Shown here: in pieces, positions 41,368 to 47,617 of the stretch | How positions within the stretch are numbered: the stretch's first letter is position 1 | Layout of the letters: every line of letters starts with the position of its first letter | Sequence record: OR455461.1 | Direction: 5' to 3' (one strand) | Length of the DNA: 64,000 nt | The notes under the pieces: model-generated | Told to the model about the DNA's origin: nothing | What the model saw: the letters and a program-made list of their open reading frames with translations, nothing else | Database searches by the model: none | Translations under genes and position numbers: made by a program

Positions 41368-43626
41368 TCATTCAAATATAAAATTAGTTGAACCTGTATC
41401 ATATACTTTATTTATATAAGTTTTATTTTTATCAATCTTATGTCTTATATAACTATCATTACTTGTACCTTTTAAGAAAGTCTTTTCAATAGGTAATTCA
41501 TTACCTACTTTATACATTCCAAATTTCTCAAATTTATAACATGTATATGAATCAGATTTTACATTAAAAGTTAGACTTGGAAATATCTTTTTAATTTTAA
41601 TTAAATCTGCGTCTGTATTTAAAAGTGAAATAAAATTATGTGATACATTAGTCTTATTATTAAAAGAAAATGCACAAATAATATAACCTTTATAATAAAG
41701 AGCGAAGAAGTCAGAATCTTTCCCATAAAAGTCTTCTGTTGAATGATTTTCAAAGAAATCTTTAAATGTAAAGAATCCCATAGATTTAATTTTTATATCA
41801 CCATAATCTAATACAGAATAATCATCTTTAAATAGTAACAATTGATGTAAGAATTTAGCATAATTCTTACCATCAATTCTTTTAGTTTCATTACGGATAT
41901 CATCATCAAATAAATTAAGAAGATGGTACCCTTTTTCTTTAAGTTCATTGTATTTCTTAAGTTGATGATATTTAGCATTTATATCAGATTTAGTTTCATT
42001 GGAATGATATTTAACTCCATTAACTTCAATAGCCAATTTATACTTTTCAGAGAGTATATCAATTTCTTTACCATCTAACAAATCTCTATTCTGTCTTTCT
42101 ATATCAAAACCTAAATATTTCATTTCATCAGATACTTTTGATTCAGCAATAGAAGATTTTCCATTACTACATGACGGACAATTAATACCTTTTTCTATTA
42201 AATCATTTGCATTTATTTTAAATTCACCATGGTCTTTACATATTACTATTGATCTTTCATATTTATCGTTAGGTCTAAATTTACTCATATTATATTTATC
42301 TTTACCATGTTTAATATTTGCAAGTGTTTGATATACTTCAGTCTTTTCTTCTTCAGTATAATCAAAGTTATTAAGATTTTTAATCTTAGTATTAAGTGAC
42401 TTTATACGTTTATACTCTTTTAATTCCTGAACAGAATATTTTCTCTTATTCTTTATTTTTGGTATTGATACTGATACTGAAACTATTTCTTTTTGATCTT
42501 CATTTGAATCTTTAACTTTATCTTTAACTTTATCTTTAACTTTATCTTTAACTTTATCTTTAATATTATCCTTAACTTTATCAATATCAAAATTATTAGA
42601 GATTTCTCTTTCTATATTTTCTTTCTTCATATTCTTTTTAATTTTCGGTGTTTTCTTTATACCTTTAAGTAATTTCTCAGTTTCTTCTTCACGTTTCTTT
42701 TTATTATTCTCTACGATTTTTTCCCAGTCTTTATCTATACTAAGTTTTTCTTCTTCACATTTAGGACAAGCTAATTTTTTATCAAATAACATTTCGTGTA
42801 TAGATGTTTTAAATTCACCATGTTTTTCACATATAATTGGTTGAATATCTTTTTCGTTAATAGGTCTAAATTTAGAAAAATCATAGTTTGTATTATTAGC
42901 TTTATTTAGAGCTAAATCATAAATATGGTTTTTCTCATCTTCTGTATAATCTTTAGTCAATTCTAAAAATAAATCAGGATCTATGTCTTTTAAATTATTA
43001 AAGATATTTTCAGTAGTTGCAACTTCTCCATCTTTCTTACAACCTGGACAGCCATCAAGATTATTTATAAGAAAATTTTTAACTGAACTTTTAAAGCTAC
43101 CATGTTTTTCACAGACTATATTTTGTTTAGTATTTATACTGTTCGGTTTAAAATTAGATACATCATAAGGAGAATATAGTCCATATTTAGCTATTGTAAT
43201 ATTATAGAAGAATAAATATTTTTCTTCTTTACTTTTATTCTTTAAATATCTAACTTTATCTTTCATTTTAGTAGAGCTATTTAAGAAAAATGTATAAGGT
43301 TCTAAAAATTCATTAGGATCTTCTACCATAGGAGATTCAAGTCGCTTAGTTCTTTCTTTATTTTTTAAAAATTTCTCAGCGTTAACTTTATTTTCATTTT
43401 CTCCTGATTCAATTATTCTTAAACAGCTTTCAAAATAATTATCGAACCATTCTTTACTTTTAGTATATTTAATCATTCTTATTTTAAAATCTTCAGATAT
43501 TTTTCCTTTATATGTTACTTTTACTTTATCTTCATTTATTTGATAATCTTTATCATTATCTATATTAAATGTATAGTCATTACCTAATTTTTCTTTAAAG
43601 CTTTCTCTTAATTTTTTACCTAACAT
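41368..43626 (-). CDS. Free-standing homing-endonuclease-like protein (repeated CxxHG Zn modules plus PD-(D/E)XK domain)
   Basis: Three C.KHG.F...CP.C modules; EIDILSEKYKLAIEVNGVKYHS. Confidence 0.75.
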   Translation of the reverse strand: MLGKKLRESFKEKLGNDYTFNIDNDKDYQINEDKVKVTYKGKISEDFKIRMIKYTKSKEWFDNYFESCLRIIESGENENKVNAEKFLKNKERTKRLESPMVEDPNEFLEPYTFFLNSSTKMKDKVRYLKNKSKEEKYLFFYNITIAKYGLYSPYDVSNFKPNSINTKQNIVCEKHGSFKSSVKNFLINNLDGCPGCKKDGEVATTENIFNNLKDIDPDLFLELTKDYTEDEKNHIYDLALNKANNTNYDFSKFRPINEKDIQPIICEKHGEFKTSIHEMLFDKKLACPKCEEEKLSIDKDWEKIVENNKKKREEETEKLLKGIKKTPKIKKNMKKENIEREISNNFDIDKVKDNIKDKVKDKVKDKVKDKVKDSNEDQKEIVSVSVSIPKIKNKRKYSVQELKEYKRIKSLNTKIKNLNNFDYTEEEKTEVYQTLANIKHGKDKYNMSKFRPNDKYERSIVICKDHGEFKINANDLIEKGINCPSCSNGKSSIAESKVSDEMKYLGFDIERQNRDLLDGKEIDILSEKYKLAIEVNGVKYHSNETKSDINAKYHQLKKYNELKEKGYHLLNLFDDDIRNETKRIDGKNYAKFLHQLLLFKDDYSVLDYGDIKIKSMGFFTFKDFFENHSTEDFYGKDSDFFALYYKGYIICAFSFNNKTNVSHNFISLLNTDADLIKIKKIFPSLTFNVKSDSYTCYKFEKFGMYKVGNELPIEKTFLKGTSNDSYIRHKIDKNKTYINKVYDTGSTNFIFE
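42509..42580. repeat. 12-bp tandem repeat encoding (KDKV)n
   Basis: TCTTTAACTTTA x4 plus two degenerate copies. Confidence 0.85.
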
Positions 43627-43715
43627 ATCATGTTCATCTCCATATTATAATATTAAGATTATATTTTAATAATCTCAAATTTATAATATATATTTAAAAC
43701 GTAAAATAAAATAAT

Positions 43716-43743
43716 CCCAATATCTAATTTAATAGATATTGGG
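43716..43743. repeat. Palindrome copy with a compensatory change
   Basis: CCCAATATCT-AATTTAAT-AGATATTGGG. Confidence 0.8.
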
Positions 43744-44180
43744 AAATATGTATAAATTAACCCTAACCTCTTCGACTAATTCAAAATCAATCTGTAGGTT
43801 AGGGTTAATGTTACTTTTACGAGAAAAGTATAAAGTTGCTTTAATAATTTTTTATATCCTATAAAGCATAAGAAGGATTAAAGAAACCAATATATGCATG
43901 GAACATATTAGGAATCTTATAGTGATATTTTAATAGTCTAGTTTTTCTTATATTAGGAACTAAAACTAGAAAACCTAAAGTGTATTAAAGTCAGATACTT
44001 ATCACAAATTAATGTAAAATAAGTCCTCTTTAATACTTCTTTTTTAATACTTTTTTACAACTAAAGATATGCCTTAACTTTAGTTGAATCTAATAAATTA
44101 AGTTTGGCATATCACTTAATTTATATTTTATTTATAGCAGGTCTGCAGCCAAGCTATAAGGATGATTAATCCTATAGGGT

Positions 44181-44265
44181 TGTTCCTAATGAGATTCGAA
44201 CTCATAACCTACAGATAAATTTTAATTCATAAATCTGTACGCTCTGACCATTGAGCTATAGGAAC
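44181..44265 (-). tRNA. tRNA-like RNA with an expanded (20-nt) anticodon loop; identity undetermined
   Basis: Acceptor GTTCCTA/TAGGAAC, D arm GCTC-AATGGTCA-GAGC, T arm ATGAG-TTCGAAT-CTCAT, anticodon stem TACAG/CTGTA around a 20-nt loop. Confidence 0.7.
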
Positions 44266-44625
44266 ATAGAAATTTAAAAAAAAATTAAAAGAGTACATTT
44301 ATCATCTATGCACTCTTTTAAGTAAATAAATATATAATAATATCTATTAATTTTTAATTATACGTAAGGAGGCGTATGGATTTCTATTTAAAACCATGAC
44401 ATATTAAAAATAGAAACAAGAGAAACCAAAGAAACATTTTTAAACCAACAACGAGTGACAAAGTAAGTTATAATAGAATTTAATCTATTATATTTTTTAG
44501 TTAAATCAAAAACTAAAAAAAATCTATAATAATTTGACGAGAATCATTATAGATTTATACTATATAGTTAATTAATATTTTTAAATAAAATTTTTTTAAT
44601 AAATAGGAATTTTAGACCAAAAAAA

Positions 44626-44695
44626 AGCTTATCCGAGGGATCGAACCCCGGACACATGATGAAAATCATTGCTCTACCAACTGAGCTAGATAAAC
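44626..44695 (-). tRNA. tRNA-like RNA with a shrunken (4-nt) anticodon loop; body resembles tRNA-Phe
   Basis: Acceptor GTTTATC/GATAAGC, D arm GCTC-AGTTGGTA-GAGC, ATGAT-TTTC-ATCAT, T arm CGGGG-TTCGATC-CCTCG; no encoded CCA. Confidence 0.7.
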
Positions 44696-44779
44696 TTTCT
44701 TCATTATTATAATATATGTTTATATTTCACTATATTACGCTTTTAATAAATATAATCTTCTATATCAATTTCATTTTGT

Positions 44780-46027
44780 TTAATTGTCATATATTCCTGA
44801 ATTATGATAATACAATTTTCTTTTATTATCAAAAATTTTCATGGGTTCTTTGATTTCTATTTTATCTTTCATTTTTAAATAATGACTATATTTCATATTA
44901 TCTAAAGAATTTGTTTTTACTTCTTTTTTGATAATATTTTCTAATTTTTCTTTTAAATTATAATTTTCATTCTCATATAAAAATACAGTAGAAAATTTAT
45001 TTTCTAAAAGAAATAGAGCTTTTTCTTGATGATAATATTTATCTTTAAATATTTCTGAATGCCAGTAAGCTCCATTACATTCGATAGCTATTTTTTCTTT
45101 AATATCATCAATATATAAAATTATATCAATTTCTCTTTTACCAATAAATTTATTATTTTCAATATGATAACTATAATTTTCGTTGTCTAAAATTTCTTTT
45201 AATTCATCCAATACATTAATTTCAAATAATGAACGTTGTTTAGAATTACATTTACAACCTCTAGGACGATATCTATCATAATTTATATAATCTTTAAAAA
45301 TAGTATTACATTTATTACATCTAAATGAATATATAAATTCTGAATTTATACCTTTAAATTCATCATAAGTGTTTAAAATGTCTATATCATATTTTTTTAA
45401 TAAATTCTTTAAATTATAATAAGTTTTATTTTTTCTAATTTTATTTAATTTTTCTTTTATGGTGTCATTTTTCATAGGATTGTCTACACCATATCTATTG
45501 ATAAAAGATTCTTTTATTATATTTGACATATTAGGTATTTCATAAATATTATTAGCATCAAATTTATTTTTTATTTGATCTTTAATATTTATGAAATTCC
45601 CATTATTTTTTAAAGTATTATGTGATTTAGAAGATATTACTTTATTTTTCATAGGATTGTCTACACCATATTTATCAATAAAAGCTTTCTTTCTTTTAAT
45701 ATTAAAATCTTCTATTTTATTCATATTGCTTGTTCCATACTTATCTTTTAAAGTTTTTCTTCCTTTTTCATATTTTTCAGGATCTTTCATAGAACAACTT
45801 CTAGAACAATATACTCCTAATTTATGTTTATTTTTTACAAATTTAACTTTATTTTTTCTACAATACTTACAGTAAATTACAGAATTTATATCATTTCTTA
45901 TATAGTACATTCTTTCAGATAAATTTACATCTTTAAATTCATTTAAAAAATCAGTGTATTTAATAATATCATTTTTATATTTATTTAAAGCAGGTCCTTT
46001 TATTTTCTTAATTTGTTCTAATTGCAT
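44780..46027 (-). CDS. Free-standing homing-endonuclease-like protein (Zn ribbons, YGVDNP repeats, PD-(D/E)XK domain)
   Basis: CKYC...YCSRSC, two YGVDNPMKN repeats, CNKC, REIDII...IAIECNGAYWHS; begins 35 nt after the RNAP beta' stop. Confidence 0.75.
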   Translation of the reverse strand: MQLEQIKKIKGPALNKYKNDIIKYTDFLNEFKDVNLSERMYYIRNDINSVIYCKYCRKNKVKFVKNKHKLGVYCSRSCSMKDPEKYEKGRKTLKDKYGTSNMNKIEDFNIKRKKAFIDKYGVDNPMKNKVISSKSHNTLKNNGNFINIKDQIKNKFDANNIYEIPNMSNIIKESFINRYGVDNPMKNDTIKEKLNKIRKNKTYYNLKNLLKKYDIDILNTYDEFKGINSEFIYSFRCNKCNTIFKDYINYDRYRPRGCKCNSKQRSLFEINVLDELKEILDNENYSYHIENNKFIGKREIDIILYIDDIKEKIAIECNGAYWHSEIFKDKYYHQEKALFLLENKFSTVFLYENENYNLKEKLENIIKKEVKTNSLDNMKYSHYLKMKDKIEIKEPMKIFDNKRKLYYHNSGIYDN

Positions 46028-46062
46028 ATTATCACCCTTTCTAAAATGATAATATATATTTA

Positions 46063-47617
46063 TTAATAAATATAATCTTCGATGTCTATTTCATTTTGTT
46101 TAATTGTCATATCATGGAAAGACTTCATAGAGCTTGTTACAATTGCTTGAGCTACCTGATTGACTAATAAACCAATATTTTCTATACCTAATTTGTAAGG
46201 GAGTTCTCCTGCACATTTACTACAGATATCTTCACTTGCACAATACATAGGACTTCTGAAGTTCAATACTTTCCCAATATGCTCATCTACATTTGAAGTA
46301 GTTAACAGTGTTAATTGACCTTTTCTTCCTGAATTATCTTCAAAATATCTATAAAGTAAAAGATTCGCATTATCTTTAGTTAAAGTTAATTTTAATGTAT
46401 GTTTTGTTCTACAATCAGAACCTTGTTTATCTAATACAGTTGTTTGGAAAGCAGACATAAGTTTTTTAGCTTGATCATTTTATTATCTATATTTTATTAT
46501 AGATTAGACTATATCTTATGAATTTAATCATTTCTATATTTAGTCGTTGAACAACTTAATAAAGTTGATGCTAGTTAGTTTTTAACATTCTAGCAATTAA
46601 TAGAATTTATTGTGAGCATCTAATTTACCCACCTTCTTGAGTCATTTATGTTAATCTATATTAATTTAATATAGATCAGACTATATCAAAAACTCTTTAT
46701 GAGTTTAATTATATTTAGTCGTTGAACAATCATTCTGATTGATGCTGATTAAGTTTATCTCTTCTCAGCAATTAATAATTTTTCTATTATTACATTACTA
46801 TAATAAAGGGCATTCATATACCTAAAGCACGTCCAGCTGAACCAGCAGTCATAATGTCTCCAAACATATATAGTTCTTCTGGATCAATTCCATCAGCTAA
46901 AGAACTCTTAGCAATACGTATTTTACTAGGATCAGCGAAGTTTTTATTTGCTCCACGTATTAATGCAGTTAACTTGAAGTTATTTCCAAAACTACCTCTT
47001 GATCCACTATCATAAATATCAAGGTCTGCTAAACCTTCTAATTCTTCTTTACTTAACTTAATTAATTCTTTTTCAATAGCACTAATAGCATTCAATTCTT
47101 CACCAGGAGTATTTAATGCTTTACCATATTTCTCTAGTAATTCTTCTTTCTTTTGTTTAACTTTATCAGGAGCAACCATCATTGTAGTTGTCAAACTAGA
47201 ATTAATAAATCCTGCTATAGAGAAACCAAGCCATTGAAGTTTATCAATATACATATTCATATCTTTAGTTGTAATAACATCATTAAGTAATAAACTAGAT
47301 AACTCAGATTGTAGATTTCCTACACCTGATCCTCCCATATCTTTATTCATATATCCTATAATAGGTCCTATTTTATTGTCTAATATAAATTTATTAAATA
47401 TATATCTTCCAACTGTTGTTCTTTCATCTTTACTATTATAAACTAAATCTTTTTTAAGTTTAAATCTATCGCTAGGATTAAACATTGGTTGTGTATTTTG
47501 TCTAAATGCAAATAATTCTTTAAGTTTATCAAGAGTAATATCTTCTTTTTTTATACTTAATAAAGTTGATACTTCTTTCTCAGATAAATCTTTTTTATCA
47601 TAAGTCATATTAACCAA
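46063..47617 (-). CDS. Virion RNA polymerase beta'-like C-terminal subunit (phiKZ gp80-like), spliced, 408 aa
   Basis: Exons 47617-46820, 46642-46627 and 46475-46063 total 1227 nt in frame. The join gives GRALG-TQEGGY-QAKKL (bridge-helix equivalent); also TTVGRYIFN and DSGSRG. Confidence 0.85.
46476..46626 (-). mobile_element. Group I intron (151 nt, ORF-less) in beta'
   Basis: Exon end GUGGGU pairs with IGS GCUCAC; P4 UGCUAG/CUAGCA, P7 GACUA/UAGUC, terminal G; splicing rebuilds a TAT codon. Confidence 0.9.
46643..46819 (-). mobile_element. Group I intron (177 nt, ORF-less) in beta'
   Basis: P1 GGUAU/AUGCC with U.G, P4 UGCUGA/UCAGCA, R GUUCAACGACUA, S GAUAUAGUCU, terminal G. Confidence 0.9.

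What the first reader, a model, noticed from the sequence alone, without database searches (positions are those of the whole stretch)
44181..44695. Two tRNA-like RNAs with intact acceptor, D and T arms but altered anticodon loops (20 nt and 4 nt)
Seen: both cloverleaves keep canonical D loops (GG), TTCGA T loops and 7-bp acceptor stems. One anticodon loop is expanded to 20 nt (ATTTATGAATTAAAATTTAT) and the other is reduced to TTTC; neither encodes CCA. A promoter-like motif (44702-44717) lies just upstream. Random pseudogene decay would be unlikely to spare everything except the anticodon loop twice. Inference: selection for the elbow and acceptor only. Possible roles are RNase P/Z processing signals that release the flanking RNAs, decoys for anticodon nucleases of anti-phage defence (PrrC, RloC, PARIS AriB), or ligands for synthetases or T-boxes.
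Basis: partly seen in the sequence, partly recalled or inferred. Interest (0 to 1): 0.7.

Follow-up and report, generated by a model that had tools for sequence, protein, structure and literature searches.

The report
tRNA-like head of phage RNA
Of the two odd "tRNAs" in this Staphylococcus jumbo phage, one is the conserved tRNA-shaped front end of an abundant, previously undescribed ~550-base structured RNA found in all related phages, and the other is a small stand-alone tRNA-Lys-like gene whose role remains open.

Summary
The window is Staphylococcus jumbo phage AH12. Both cloverleaves are real (Rfam tRNA 60 and 45.8 bits), on the minus strand, with the anticodon loops described.

Element 2 (44265-44181) is not a decaying pseudogene. 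It occurs in all eight relatives examined, and its acceptor, T and D arms are kept through compensatory changes. Its anticodon arm differs in every lineage. It is directly fused to a conserved multi-hairpin RNA: 97% of cells paired and 23 co-varying pairs, against 1-4 in slid controls.

In four metatranscriptomes, the stretch from element 2's 5' end to a terminator (44267-43718) is the only strongly covered part, about 25-fold above its neighbours. No Rfam family matches the body.

My best reading is that the tRNA-like head is an RNase P handle and a protective 5' cap, like a natural "tRNA scaffold". The body's function is unknown. Its invariant complementary loops suggest self-association, as in ROOL and GOLLD.

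Element 1 (44695-44626) is a lineage-specific mini-gene: early promoter, tRNA-Lys-like body with an anticodon arm 3 nt short, then a U8 run. The three genomes carrying it are near-identical, so selection on it cannot be tested.

The parts
44707..44717 (-). Early (virion-RNAP type) promoter motif ATATATTATAA, 11 nt upstream of E1
   Evidence: Exact motif, 8 copies in the window against 1.7 expected, mostly upstream of ORF starts. It matches the annotated AR9 early promoter AAATATATATTAT and the MarsHill consensus TATATTAT.
44626..44695 (-). E1: 70-nt tRNA-Lys-like cloverleaf whose anticodon arm is 3 nt short (5-bp stem with UUUC loop, or 4-bp stem with 6-nt loop)
   Evidence: Rfam tRNA 45.8 bits and ARAGORN. 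The D and T arms are identical to mycobacteriophage tRNA-Lys(UUU), with the gap in the anticodon arm. Cloverleaf -18.3 against MFE -20.4 kcal/mol. Present only in AH12, Machias and PB50, where it is 100% identical.
44619..44626 (-). U8 run starting at the E1 discriminator; together with the extended T-arm hairpin it scores as an intrinsic terminator
   Evidence: Terminator scan, stem 44654-44630 followed by a U-run.
44515..44553 (-). Hairpin plus U-run terminator, positional equivalent of the terminator that follows the upstream gene in the S6-type phages
   Evidence: Sequence and alignment A5.
44489..44503 (-). Invariant TAACTA(N4)AATATA motif, candidate late-type promoter or leader start of the E2 RNA precursor (inferred)
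   Evidence: Invariant in all 7 aligned phages. It resembles the AR9 late consensus AACA(N6)TW quoted. No transcription start was mapped.
44276..44319 (-). Strong hairpin plus U9 immediately upstream of E2 (leader hairpin or terminator-like)
   Evidence: Sequence. An equivalent hairpin is present in the relatives.
44181..44265 (-). E2: tRNA-like 5' domain (acceptor, D and T arms intact; 'anticodon arm' is a 7-bp stem with a 16-nt loop)
   Evidence: Rfam 60 bits. The cloverleaf is the MFE fold in all lineages. Compensatory changes occur in 3/7 acceptor pairs, 1/5 T pairs and 4/6 anticodon-stem pairs. MarsHill's copy scores 36.7 bits.
44159..44173 (-). H1 hairpin AGGAU-UAAUC-AUCCU, invariant in all 8 phages
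44134..44157 (-). H2 hairpin: co-varying 8-bp stem and invariant loop G-CUGCAG-A (6-nt palindrome)
   Evidence: 6 of 8 pairs carry compensatory changes. Loop 100% conserved. Chance of a palindrome of this kind is about 0.07.
44093..44124 (-). H3 hairpin: co-varying 11-bp stem, loop containing AUAUGCC
   Evidence: 5 of 11 pairs carry compensatory changes.
44058..44086 (-). H4 hairpin: co-varying 9-bp stem, loop containing GGCAUAU, complementary to the H3 loop
   Evidence: 4 of 9 pairs carry compensatory changes. The 7-nt loop-loop complementarity has P about 0.002 and a duplex energy of -12.1 kcal/mol.
43983..44035 (-). M5 module: stem with conserved internal loop AGGAC / GUAUCUGA (absent in Madawaska, diverged in LY01)
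   Evidence: 2 co-varying pairs.
43929..43975 (-). M6 module: invariant stem UCUAGUU/AACUAGA with a variable loop, present in all 8 phages
43761..43804 (-). Terminator-like hairpin T1, CCCUAACCU...AGGUUAGGG, conserved in all 8 phages
43702..43744 (-). Terminator T2 (12-bp stem plus U-run); the full-length RNA contig ends inside it at 43718

Best explanation
E2 is neither a decoding tRNA nor a decaying pseudogene. It is the tRNA-shaped 5' domain of a conserved, abundant, ~550-nt structured non-coding RNA (window 44265 to about 43705, minus strand) that every Staphylococcus jumbo phage examined carries once per genome. SHOWN: the cloverleaf and four downstream hairpins are maintained by compensatory substitutions; loops and junctions are nearly invariant; the anticodon arm is a free expansion segment (5-nt loop, 8-nt loop, 16-20-nt loop or a ~20-bp rod, depending on lineage); and RNA contigs from four metatranscriptomes cover exactly this unit at far higher depth than the neighbouring genes, stopping at E2's 5' end and continuing across its 3' end into the body. 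INFERRED mechanism: the precursor is transcribed from upstream, in four phages together with a genuine tRNA-Asn only 5-7 nt away. Host RNase P, which needs the acceptor/T-stem stack and the D/T-loop elbow, cuts at E2's 5' end. The tRNA-like fold then stays attached as a base-paired, nuclease-resistant 5' cap while terminator hairpins protect the 3' end. This would be a natural counterpart of the engineered 'tRNA scaffold'. The function of the body is unknown. The invariant complementary loops H3 and H4 and the palindromic loop H2 suggest loop-loop (kissing) contacts, possibly between molecules. E1 is a separate mini-gene specific to the AH12/Machias/PB50 lineage: early promoter, about 11 nt, a tRNA-Lys-like body with an anticodon arm 3 nt too short, then U8. 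It is probably made as a small non-decoding tRNA-like RNA early in infection. Whether it is functional or a recently disabled tRNA-Lys cannot be decided.
For: Identity and relatives. E2 is present in all 8 phages with different anticodon arms. Covariation: 97.4% of cells paired against 32-41% in slid controls; 23 pairs with changes on both sides against 1-4; 0/500 shuffles reach the observed score. G.U cells 16 against A.C cells 2, which fixes the RNA strand. Domain conservation: T stem 0.92, D stem 0.83, anticodon loop 0.26; H1, H2 and H4 loops and J3/4 0.93-1.00. RNA evidence: in X7 a contig at 43929-44194 has depth 328 against 2.6-12.9 for flanking contigs; in X6 a 568-nt contig spans 43718-44267 with nothing flanking; in X8 a contig covers 44023-44255 at depth 55; X5 covers 43923-44216 and beyond. 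No contig extends upstream of 44267. X5, X6 and X8 span the E2/body junction at 44181/44180, and they retain the expanded loop, so it is not an intron. Spacers of 5-7 nt between tRNA-Asn and E2 leave no room for a promoter. The full-length RNA folds with z=-7.2. One copy per genome, scoring 190-234 bits with model R1. RNase P processing of tRNA-like structures in non-tRNA transcripts, and the tRNA-scaffold precedent (acceptor, T and D arms kept; anticodon arm used as insertion site). E1 promoter, U-run and terminator score. E1's tRNA-Lys-like body.
Against: No RNase P cleavage, transcription start or 3' end has been mapped experimentally. Contig ends are only indirect evidence for RNA ends, and the libraries are unstranded metatranscriptomes of unknown infection state. 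The family is small: 8 genomes in about 5 lineages, plus environmental copies. A strong hairpin with a U-run sits directly upstream of E2 in AH12, so the precursor must read through it, or the true promoter is unidentified. The X7 high-depth contig stops at 44194 inside the T arm, which is unexplained. The 5' cap/stabiliser role is by analogy only. For E1 there is no comparative signal beyond one G.U to G-C change in a metatranscriptome variant, and its depth there equals that of the neighbouring mRNA contig.
Confidence: 0.6

Rival explanations
1. Both elements are degenerating pseudo-tRNAs under no selection, which is the published view for Machias, Madawaska and MarsHill.
For: Korn et al. 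call them aberrant pseudo-tRNAs and report none in MarsHill. E1 occurs only in one shallow lineage and lacks a usable anticodon loop. AH12 has lost the true tRNA-Asn that its relatives keep.
Against: For E2 this is contradicted. It is present in all lineages including MarsHill (36.7 bits). All four stems are kept by compensatory changes. The T and D arms are far more conserved than the anticodon arm. It is part of an abundant RNA. For E1, all stems are perfect and it has its own promoter and U-run, but the lineage is too shallow to exclude recent decay.
Confidence: 0.12
2. Release model (mascRNA or TMER type): the tRNA-like elements are RNase P and RNase Z cleavage signals, and E2 is cut off so that a small tRNA-like RNA and a separate body RNA are the functional products.
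For: [quoted passage not shown] The X7 high-depth contig covers the body but only 14 nt of E2.
Against: Contigs in X5, X6 and X8 run uninterrupted across the E2 3' junction at the same depth as the body. In most lineages C residues follow the discriminator (ACC, CC, CCC), and C74/C75 are RNase Z anti-determinants (own knowledge).
Confidence: 0.17
3. Decoy or sponge: the tRNA-like bodies titrate host tRNA-directed factors such as anticodon nucleases of defence systems, modification enzymes, synthetases or T-boxes.
For: E1 has a tRNA-Lys-type body, and tRNA-Lys is a known target of anticodon nucleases such as PrrC and PARIS AriB (own knowledge). E1 sits behind an early promoter.
Against: Anticodon nucleases, LysRS and T-box specifier loops read the anticodon loop, which E1 lacks and which is hypervariable in E2. 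No defence context was tested. E1 is missing from most phages in the clade.
Confidence: 0.07
4. Non-canonical decoders or intron-containing tRNAs: frameshift-suppressor tRNAs (8-nt loop in SA1, 6-nt loop in E1), or tRNAs whose loop insert is spliced out.
For: ARAGORN reads a 4-base anticodon in SA1 and a 2-base anticodon in E1 and E2. These genomes contain many introns.
Against: No anticodon is conserved among the E2 orthologues: the S6 type has a 7-bp stem with a 5-nt loop. The inserts are 13-30 nt, far below group I or II intron size, and no intron model matches. RNA contigs retain the inserts. Most E2 molecules have no free 3' end.
Confidence: 0.03

Closest known systems
ROOL and GOLLD RNAs (large ornate phage and prophage RNAs; Rfam RF03087 and RF01998)
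   Same: Phage-encoded, several hundred nt, very abundant, no known protein partner, typically next to tRNA genes (GOLLD sometimes with a tRNA inside or just upstream), and built around conserved kissing loops. Here the RNA is also phage-encoded and abundant, follows tRNA-Asn, and has invariant complementary loops.
   Different: No match to either Rfam model, even at E<=10 on a 1-kb scan. The secondary structure is different. The tRNA-like unit is a fixed, non-decoding 5' domain of the RNA itself rather than a neighbouring real tRNA. Oligomerisation was not tested.
Engineered 'tRNA scaffold' for stable RNA expression (Ponchon and Dardel)
   Same: The acceptor stem, T arm and D arm are kept so that cellular enzymes process and protect the RNA, while the anticodon stem-loop becomes a tolerated insertion site. 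E2 shows exactly this constraint pattern, including 13-30-nt inserts in the anticodon arm.
   Different: In the scaffold the cargo sits inside the anticodon arm and the 3' end is a normal tRNA end. Here the main cargo is fused to the 3' side of the acceptor stem.
MALAT1/mascRNA, MEN-beta, and gammaherpesvirus TMER tRNA-like elements
   Same: A non-aminoacylated tRNA-like fold inside a longer non-coding transcript is recognised by RNase P (and RNase Z) to define RNA ends (TMERs from own knowledge).
   Different: Those are systems of eukaryotes and eukaryotic viruses, and there the tRNA-like piece is released. Here the contigs indicate it stays on the 5' end of the body.
Bacterial YrlA (Y-RNA-like) RNAs
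   Same: A non-coding RNA with a tRNA-like domain (acceptor, T and D arms) whose anticodon arm is replaced by another module. Some phages encode them.
   Different: YrlA works with a Ro/TROVE protein. No TROVE gene is present in AH12, S6 or SA1 and no Y RNA model matches.
Phage T4 stable RNAs C and D (species 1 and 2) in the tRNA cluster
   Same: Stable phage RNAs of unknown function that are co-transcribed and co-processed with tRNAs (own knowledge, not tested here).
   Different: They are shorter and have no covalently attached cloverleaf.

Membership tests
Canonical decoding tRNA (RF00005) | Cloverleaf with 7-bp acceptor, D arm with G18G19, and T arm with the U54-U55-C56 loop | tested here: met
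   E1 scores 45.8 bits and E2 60 bits, above the gathering score of 29.
Canonical decoding tRNA (RF00005) | 5-bp anticodon stem with a 7-nt loop (U33, purine 37), and an anticodon conserved among orthologues | tested here: not met
   E1 has a 4-nt (or 6-nt) loop. E2 loops are 20 nt (AH12), about 37 nt (Machias, PB50), 8 nt (SA1) and 5 nt (S6 type). Loop identity is 0.26.
Canonical decoding tRNA (RF00005) | Free 3' end with CCA (encoded or added), and aminoacylation | tested here: inconclusive
   No CCA is encoded. RNA contigs continue from E2 into the body without a break. CCA addition and charging cannot be tested with these tools.
Decaying pseudo-tRNA | No purifying selection: mismatches accumulate in stems and the gene is lost in relatives | tested here: not met
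   For E2, 100% of acceptor, D and T cells are paired, with compensatory changes, and it is present in all 8 phages. For E1 the test is inconclusive, because the three copies are identical.
Intron-containing tRNA (bacterial group I type) | Self-splicing intron of at least ~200 nt in the anticodon loop, absent from the mature RNA | tested here: not met
   The inserts are 13-30 nt. There is no Intron_gpI or Intron_gpII match. The inserts are retained in RNA contigs.
tmRNA | tRNA-Ala-like acceptor (G3:U70) formed by the 5' and 3' ends, pseudoknots, and a tag reading frame | tested here: not met
   ARAGORN finds no tmRNA. Rfam gives no match. Pair 3:70 is U-A in all copies. The cloverleaf is contiguous.
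ROOL / GOLLD | Match to the family covariance models and their conserved architecture | tested here: not met
   No match at gathering score or at E<=10.
ROOL / GOLLD | Homo-oligomeric assembly through intermolecular kissing loops | not testable with these tools
YrlA / Y RNA | Partner Ro60/Rsr (TROVE) protein encoded nearby, and a Ro-binding helix | tested here: not met
   PF05731 is absent from the AH12, S6 and SA1 genomes, and the positive controls worked.
RNase P substrate (tRNA-like processing handle) | Stacked acceptor/T-stem helix with an intact T-loop/D-loop elbow, and a 5' end generated at position +1 | tested here: inconclusive
   The structural requirements are met and conserved. All four RNA contigs stop at or before 44267, 2 nt from the predicted +1. 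Cleavage itself was not assayed.

The most novel reading that the evidence does not exclude
The E2 RNA founds a new class of large 'ornate' phage RNAs. A tRNA-like head is covalently fused to a body whose invariant loops (H3 AUAUGCC with H4 GGCAUAU, and the palindromic H2 CUGCAG) drive RNA-only homo-oligomerisation, as in ROOL, GOLLD or phi29 pRNA. The assembly would then display several tRNA elbows to the host tRNA or ribosome machinery during jumbo-phage infection.
Probability: 0.2. Interest if true: 0.85.

Novelty: new variant of a known kind. Interest (0 to 1): 0.62.

Why it matters
The genes were published as decaying pseudo-tRNAs, and MarsHill was reported to have none. The comparative and RNA data instead show the one universally conserved tRNA-like gene of this clade, fused to an unclassified structured RNA that is the dominant transcript of its region.

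This would be a natural bacterial-virus example of a tRNA fold used as a processing and stability module, which is the principle behind the laboratory tRNA scaffold and behind eukaryotic mascRNA/TMER elements. It also adds a compact, tractable candidate (a ~200-nt core) to the small set of abundant phage RNAs of unknown function that sit beside tRNA genes.

On the practical side, tRNA finders and annotators mislabel it as tRNA-Asn pseudo, tRNA-Ser, or a spurious 36-aa CDS.

Tried and rejected
- **Wider homologues.** Two motif scans of IMG/VR gave nothing or a chance coding hit (L009). Metagenome and genome scans gave 14 loci, of which only L027 (S6-like) is real by the covariance model.
- **Model R1 on other phages.** On AR9, BpSp, Listeria LPJP1 and phage K it hits only ordinary tRNAs at 36-46 bits, and the body does not align. 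The RNA is therefore not found outside the Staphylococcus jumbo phages, and the phage K lncRNAs are not homologues.
- **Syntenic gap in LPJP1.** It is an ORF-less group II intron and is unrelated.
- **Neighbouring ORFs as protein partners.** Both are Hef-type homing endonucleases, so they are mobile elements and unlikely partners.
- **Ro/TROVE partner.** Absent.
- **Whole genome for the window.** Not held; whole records were searched through handles instead.
- **Sigma-70 promoter scan.** Uninformative: 11 found against 10.5 expected.
- **Intramolecular H3-H4 kissing.** I consider this sterically unlikely, because a 7-bp loop-loop helix stacked between 11-bp and 9-bp stems cannot be bridged by a 6-nt linker. 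This is geometric reasoning only, not a computation.
Full report
**Where the window comes from.** The 3-kb stretch around the finding is 100% identical to Staphylococcus phage AH12 (OR455461.1, 264.7 kb). AH12 is a uracil-DNA-type jumbo phage of the AR9/PBS1-like group that encodes two multisubunit RNA polymerases. PB50 and Machias are about 95% identical over the shared part. The finding lies in a 1.15-kb gene-free interval on the minus strand, between the virion-RNAP beta' gene region and a 752-aa ORF.

**Checking the observation.** ARAGORN and Rfam's tRNA model each call exactly two tRNA-like genes in the 64-kb window:
- E1 at 44695-44626, 45.8 bits.
- E2 at 44265-44181, 60 bits.

Both are far above the gathering score of 29, with window-wide E-values of 1.5e-6 and 1.8e-10.
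- Both have 7-bp acceptor stems, GG-containing D loops and TTCGA T loops.
- E1's anticodon arm is 14 nt (ATGAT-TTTC-ATCAT).
- E2 has a 20-nt loop closed by TACAG/CTGTA, which two further pairs can extend.
- Neither encodes CCA.

The upstream motif ATATATTATAA (44717-44707) is the early-promoter motif of this phage group. It occurs 8 times in the window against 1.7 expected. A scan of the whole AH12 record finds no other tRNA-like gene and no ordinary tRNA.

**E2 in related phages.** A sensitive DNA search showed that the 3' half of E2 plus about 290 nt downstream is conserved at about 73% in the more distant Staphylococcus jumbo phages S6, PALS_2, MarsHill, DC4, LY01, Madawaska and SA1. I fetched the loci and read them. 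Every phage has an E2 orthologue at the same place. In all of them the acceptor stem, D arm and T arm are intact, and the cloverleaf is the minimum-free-energy fold. The "anticodon arm" differs in every lineage:

| Lineage | Anticodon arm |
|---|---|
| S6, MarsHill, Madawaska, LY01 | 7-bp stem with a 5-nt loop |
| SA1 | 8-nt loop |
| AH12 | 16-20-nt loop |
| Machias, PB50 | ~20-bp rod with a GGAU tip |

Machias, PB50, S6 and Madawaska also carry a genuine tRNA-Asn(GUU), 62-72 bits, only 5-7 nt upstream of E2. The published genome paper treats these genes as degenerating pseudo-tRNAs under no selection and reports no tRNA in MarsHill. In fact MarsHill's E2 reaches 36.7 bits with the Rfam tRNA model.

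**E2 is the head of a larger structured RNA.** The eight-phage alignment shows that E2 is followed directly by four hairpins (H1-H4), two further modules (M5, M6) and terminator hairpins. For a structure of 62 pairs covering the cloverleaf, H1-H4 and an H3/H4 loop-loop helix, one search gives:

| Measure | Proposed structure | Partners slid by 1-3 columns |
|---|---|---|
| Cells forming standard pairs | 97.4% | 32-41% |
| Pairs with changes on both sides | 23 | 1-4 |

None of 500 shuffles reached the observed covariation score. Compensatory changes occur in the acceptor stem (3 of 7 pairs), T stem (1 of 5), anticodon stem (4 of 6), H2 (6 of 8), H3 (5 of 11) and H4 (4 of 9). G.U cells outnumber A.C cells 16 to 2, so the structure belongs to RNA read from the window's minus strand.

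The conservation pattern is typical of a functional RNA:
- The stems vary (identity 0.52-0.77).
- The H1, H2 and H4 loops, junction J3/4 and the tail are 93-100% identical.
- Within the tRNA-like head, the T stem (0.92), T loop (0.80) and D stem (0.83) are conserved, but the anticodon loop is 0.26.

The full-length AH12 sequence folds with z=-7.2 against shuffles. No Rfam family other than tRNA matches, even at E<=10 on a 1-kb scan.

**RNA evidence.** Four public metatranscriptomes hold this sequence. Laid on 42000-47000, the only strongly covered part is 43718-44267.

| Run | Contig (window coordinates) | Depth | Flanking coverage |
|---|---|---|---|
| X7 | 43929-44194 | 328 | 2.6-12.9 for neighbouring gene contigs and the E1 region |
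| X6 | 43718-44267 (568 nt) | 10.8 | none |
| X8 | 44023-44255 | 55 | none |
| X5 | 43923-44216, plus 41 nt of a Machias-type loop insert | 9.55 | none |

Three points follow:
- No contig extends upstream of 44267, which is 2 nt from E2's predicted +1.
- X5, X6 and X8 run straight across the E2/body junction (44181/44180), so a large share of the molecules keeps the tRNA-like head.
- The expanded loops are retained in the RNA, so they are not introns.

The X6 contig ends at 43718, inside the 3' strand of terminator T2. These are assembled contigs from unstranded libraries, so they show presence and relative abundance but not exact ends.

**Distribution.** A covariance model of E2 plus H1-H4 (R1) finds exactly one copy, scoring 190-234 bits, in each Staphylococcus jumbo phage searched. 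In Bacillus phage AR9, BpSp, Listeria phage LPJP1 and Staphylococcus phage K it picks up only ordinary tRNAs at 36-46 bits, and the body does not align. Motif scans of IMG/VR, JGI metagenomes and GTDB genomes added only one S6-like environmental copy. The RNA therefore looks specific to this clade.

**Mechanism for E2.** Shown: conservation of exactly the tRNA parts that form the acceptor/T-stem stack and the D/T-loop elbow; freedom of the anticodon arm; an RNA boundary at the cloverleaf's 5' end; and continuity into the body.

The remaining steps are inferred. In four phages E2 lies 5-7 nt after a real tRNA-Asn, so the two must be co-transcribed and separated by the tRNA-processing machinery. 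RNase P is the enzyme that makes tRNA 5' ends, and it processes tRNA-like structures in non-tRNA transcripts.

After cleavage, the 5' end is buried in the acceptor helix. In Firmicutes this should hinder 5'-end-dependent decay by RNase J1 (own knowledge), while the terminator hairpins protect the 3' end. This is the logic of the engineered tRNA scaffold, which keeps the acceptor, T and D arms and converts the anticodon arm into an insertion site. E2's 13-30-nt anticodon-arm inserts mirror that design.

RNase Z could in principle cut after the discriminator. However, the contigs cross that site, and in most lineages C residues follow the discriminator, which are RNase Z anti-determinants in B. 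subtilis (own knowledge).

**The body.** Its function is unknown. The invariant H3 loop (AUAUGCC) and H4 loop (GGCAUAU) can form a 7-bp helix (-12.1 kcal/mol; chance about 0.002). The invariant H2 loop G-CUGCAG-A carries a 6-nt palindrome (chance about 0.07, weak on its own). H3 and H4 are adjacent hairpins joined by 6 nt, so a full loop-loop helix within one molecule looks sterically difficult. Pairing between molecules is a plausible alternative, but this is reasoning, not a test.

ROOL and GOLLD are the nearest precedents. They are abundant phage and prophage RNAs near tRNA islands, sometimes with a tRNA inside or just upstream, and they assemble through kissing loops. By model match this RNA is not a member of either family. 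An RNA-only complex prediction was not possible.

**E1.** E1 exists only in AH12, Machias and PB50, and is identical in all three.
- Its D and T arms are identical to those of a mycobacteriophage tRNA-Lys(UUU), and the difference is a 3-nt shortfall in the anticodon arm.
- It sits 11 nt downstream of an exact early-promoter motif. A U8 run follows immediately, and with the extended T-arm hairpin this scores as an intrinsic terminator. It therefore looks like a compact transcription unit.
- Its cloverleaf lies within 2 kcal/mol of the MFE.
- One metatranscriptome variant changes a T-stem G.U to G-C, which preserves the structure but is a single event.
- In X7 its depth equals that of the neighbouring mRNA contig. 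Small RNAs are poorly captured in such libraries, so this does not settle anything.

I cannot distinguish a functional non-decoding tRNA-like RNA from a recently disabled tRNA-Lys. The decoy idea is attractive because tRNA-Lys is a known target of anticodon nucleases. However, the loop that such enzymes read is the part that is missing.

**Context.** The flanking ORFs are homing endonucleases:
- The 752-aa ORF has DUF723/treble-clef zinc fingers plus a REase_MTES_1575 domain, like AR9 g265.
- The unannotated 415-aa ORF has DUF7487 plus REase_MTES_1575.

Neither is a likely partner of the RNA. No Ro/TROVE protein is encoded, which rules out a YrlA-type RNP.

**Verdict.** The main point was missed, namely that E2 is the 5' domain of a new, abundant, clade-wide structured RNA. 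I rate the finding as a new variant of a known kind, since tRNA-like processing and stability modules and tRNA-linked large phage RNAs are both known. Interest is moderately high, because it overturns the published "decaying pseudo-tRNA" reading and gives a compact, testable new RNA.

Noticed in passing
window 44360-44377 (-), with TATAAT at 44357-44362: The leader upstream of E2 contains a conserved hairpin whose loop is CCUCCU (like the anti-Shine-Dalgarno sequence). The stem co-varies between clades (AUACG/CGUAU in AH12, AUGGG/CCCGU in S6). It is present in 7 phages but not in SA1. It could be a separate small-RNA element or part of the precursor leader.
   Followed up: partly
window 44744-46062: AH12-specific 1319-bp insertion immediately after the vRNAP beta' stop codon. 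It carries an unannotated 415-aa Hef-type homing endonuclease ORF (44780-46027, minus strand). An RNA contig from a PB50-like strain joins 44743 directly to 46063.
   Followed up: partly
window 41368-43626 (-): The 752-aa ORF downstream of the RNA is a zinc-finger (DUF723/treble clef) plus REase_MTES_1575 homing endonuclease, similar in kind to AR9 g265. It has its own early-promoter motif at 43681-43691.
   Followed up: partly
window 44194-44196: The highest-depth RNA contig (X7, depth 328) stops at 44194, 2 nt 3' of the A58-equivalent position of E2's T loop (44196). This could be an RT stop at a modified base, a strain-variation assembly break, or chance.
   Followed up: no
L012 5227-5822 (Listeria phage LPJP1): The 865-nt unannotated gap after the vRNAP beta' gene is an ORF-less group II intron (Rfam D1-D4 43 bits, D5/D6 66 bits).
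   Followed up: yes
L005 2421-2531 (MarsHill gp163); L006 2449-2524 (SA1 'tRNA-Ser'); L002 (Machias 'tRNA-Asn' pseudo at 4796-4867): The public annotations of this element are inconsistent. MarsHill has a 36-aa CDS on the opposite strand over E2. SA1 labels E2 as tRNA-Ser. Machias labels E1 as a tRNA-Asn pseudogene and leaves its E2 unannotated.
   Followed up: yes
window 46475-46819 and 46063-47617: The vRNAP beta' mid-domain gene is split in AH12 into ORFs of 131 and 267 aa. An RNA contig skips 46475 to 46819 (343 nt, with 15 other letters between), consistent with an intron or a strain difference, as annotated for Machias (a joined CDS).
   Followed up: no
elsewhere in these genomes (MarsHill gp206): The genome paper reports a retron-like reverse transcriptase with a 1.2-kb non-coding region upstream. 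I did not examine whether it has any link to the tRNA-like RNAs.
   Followed up: no
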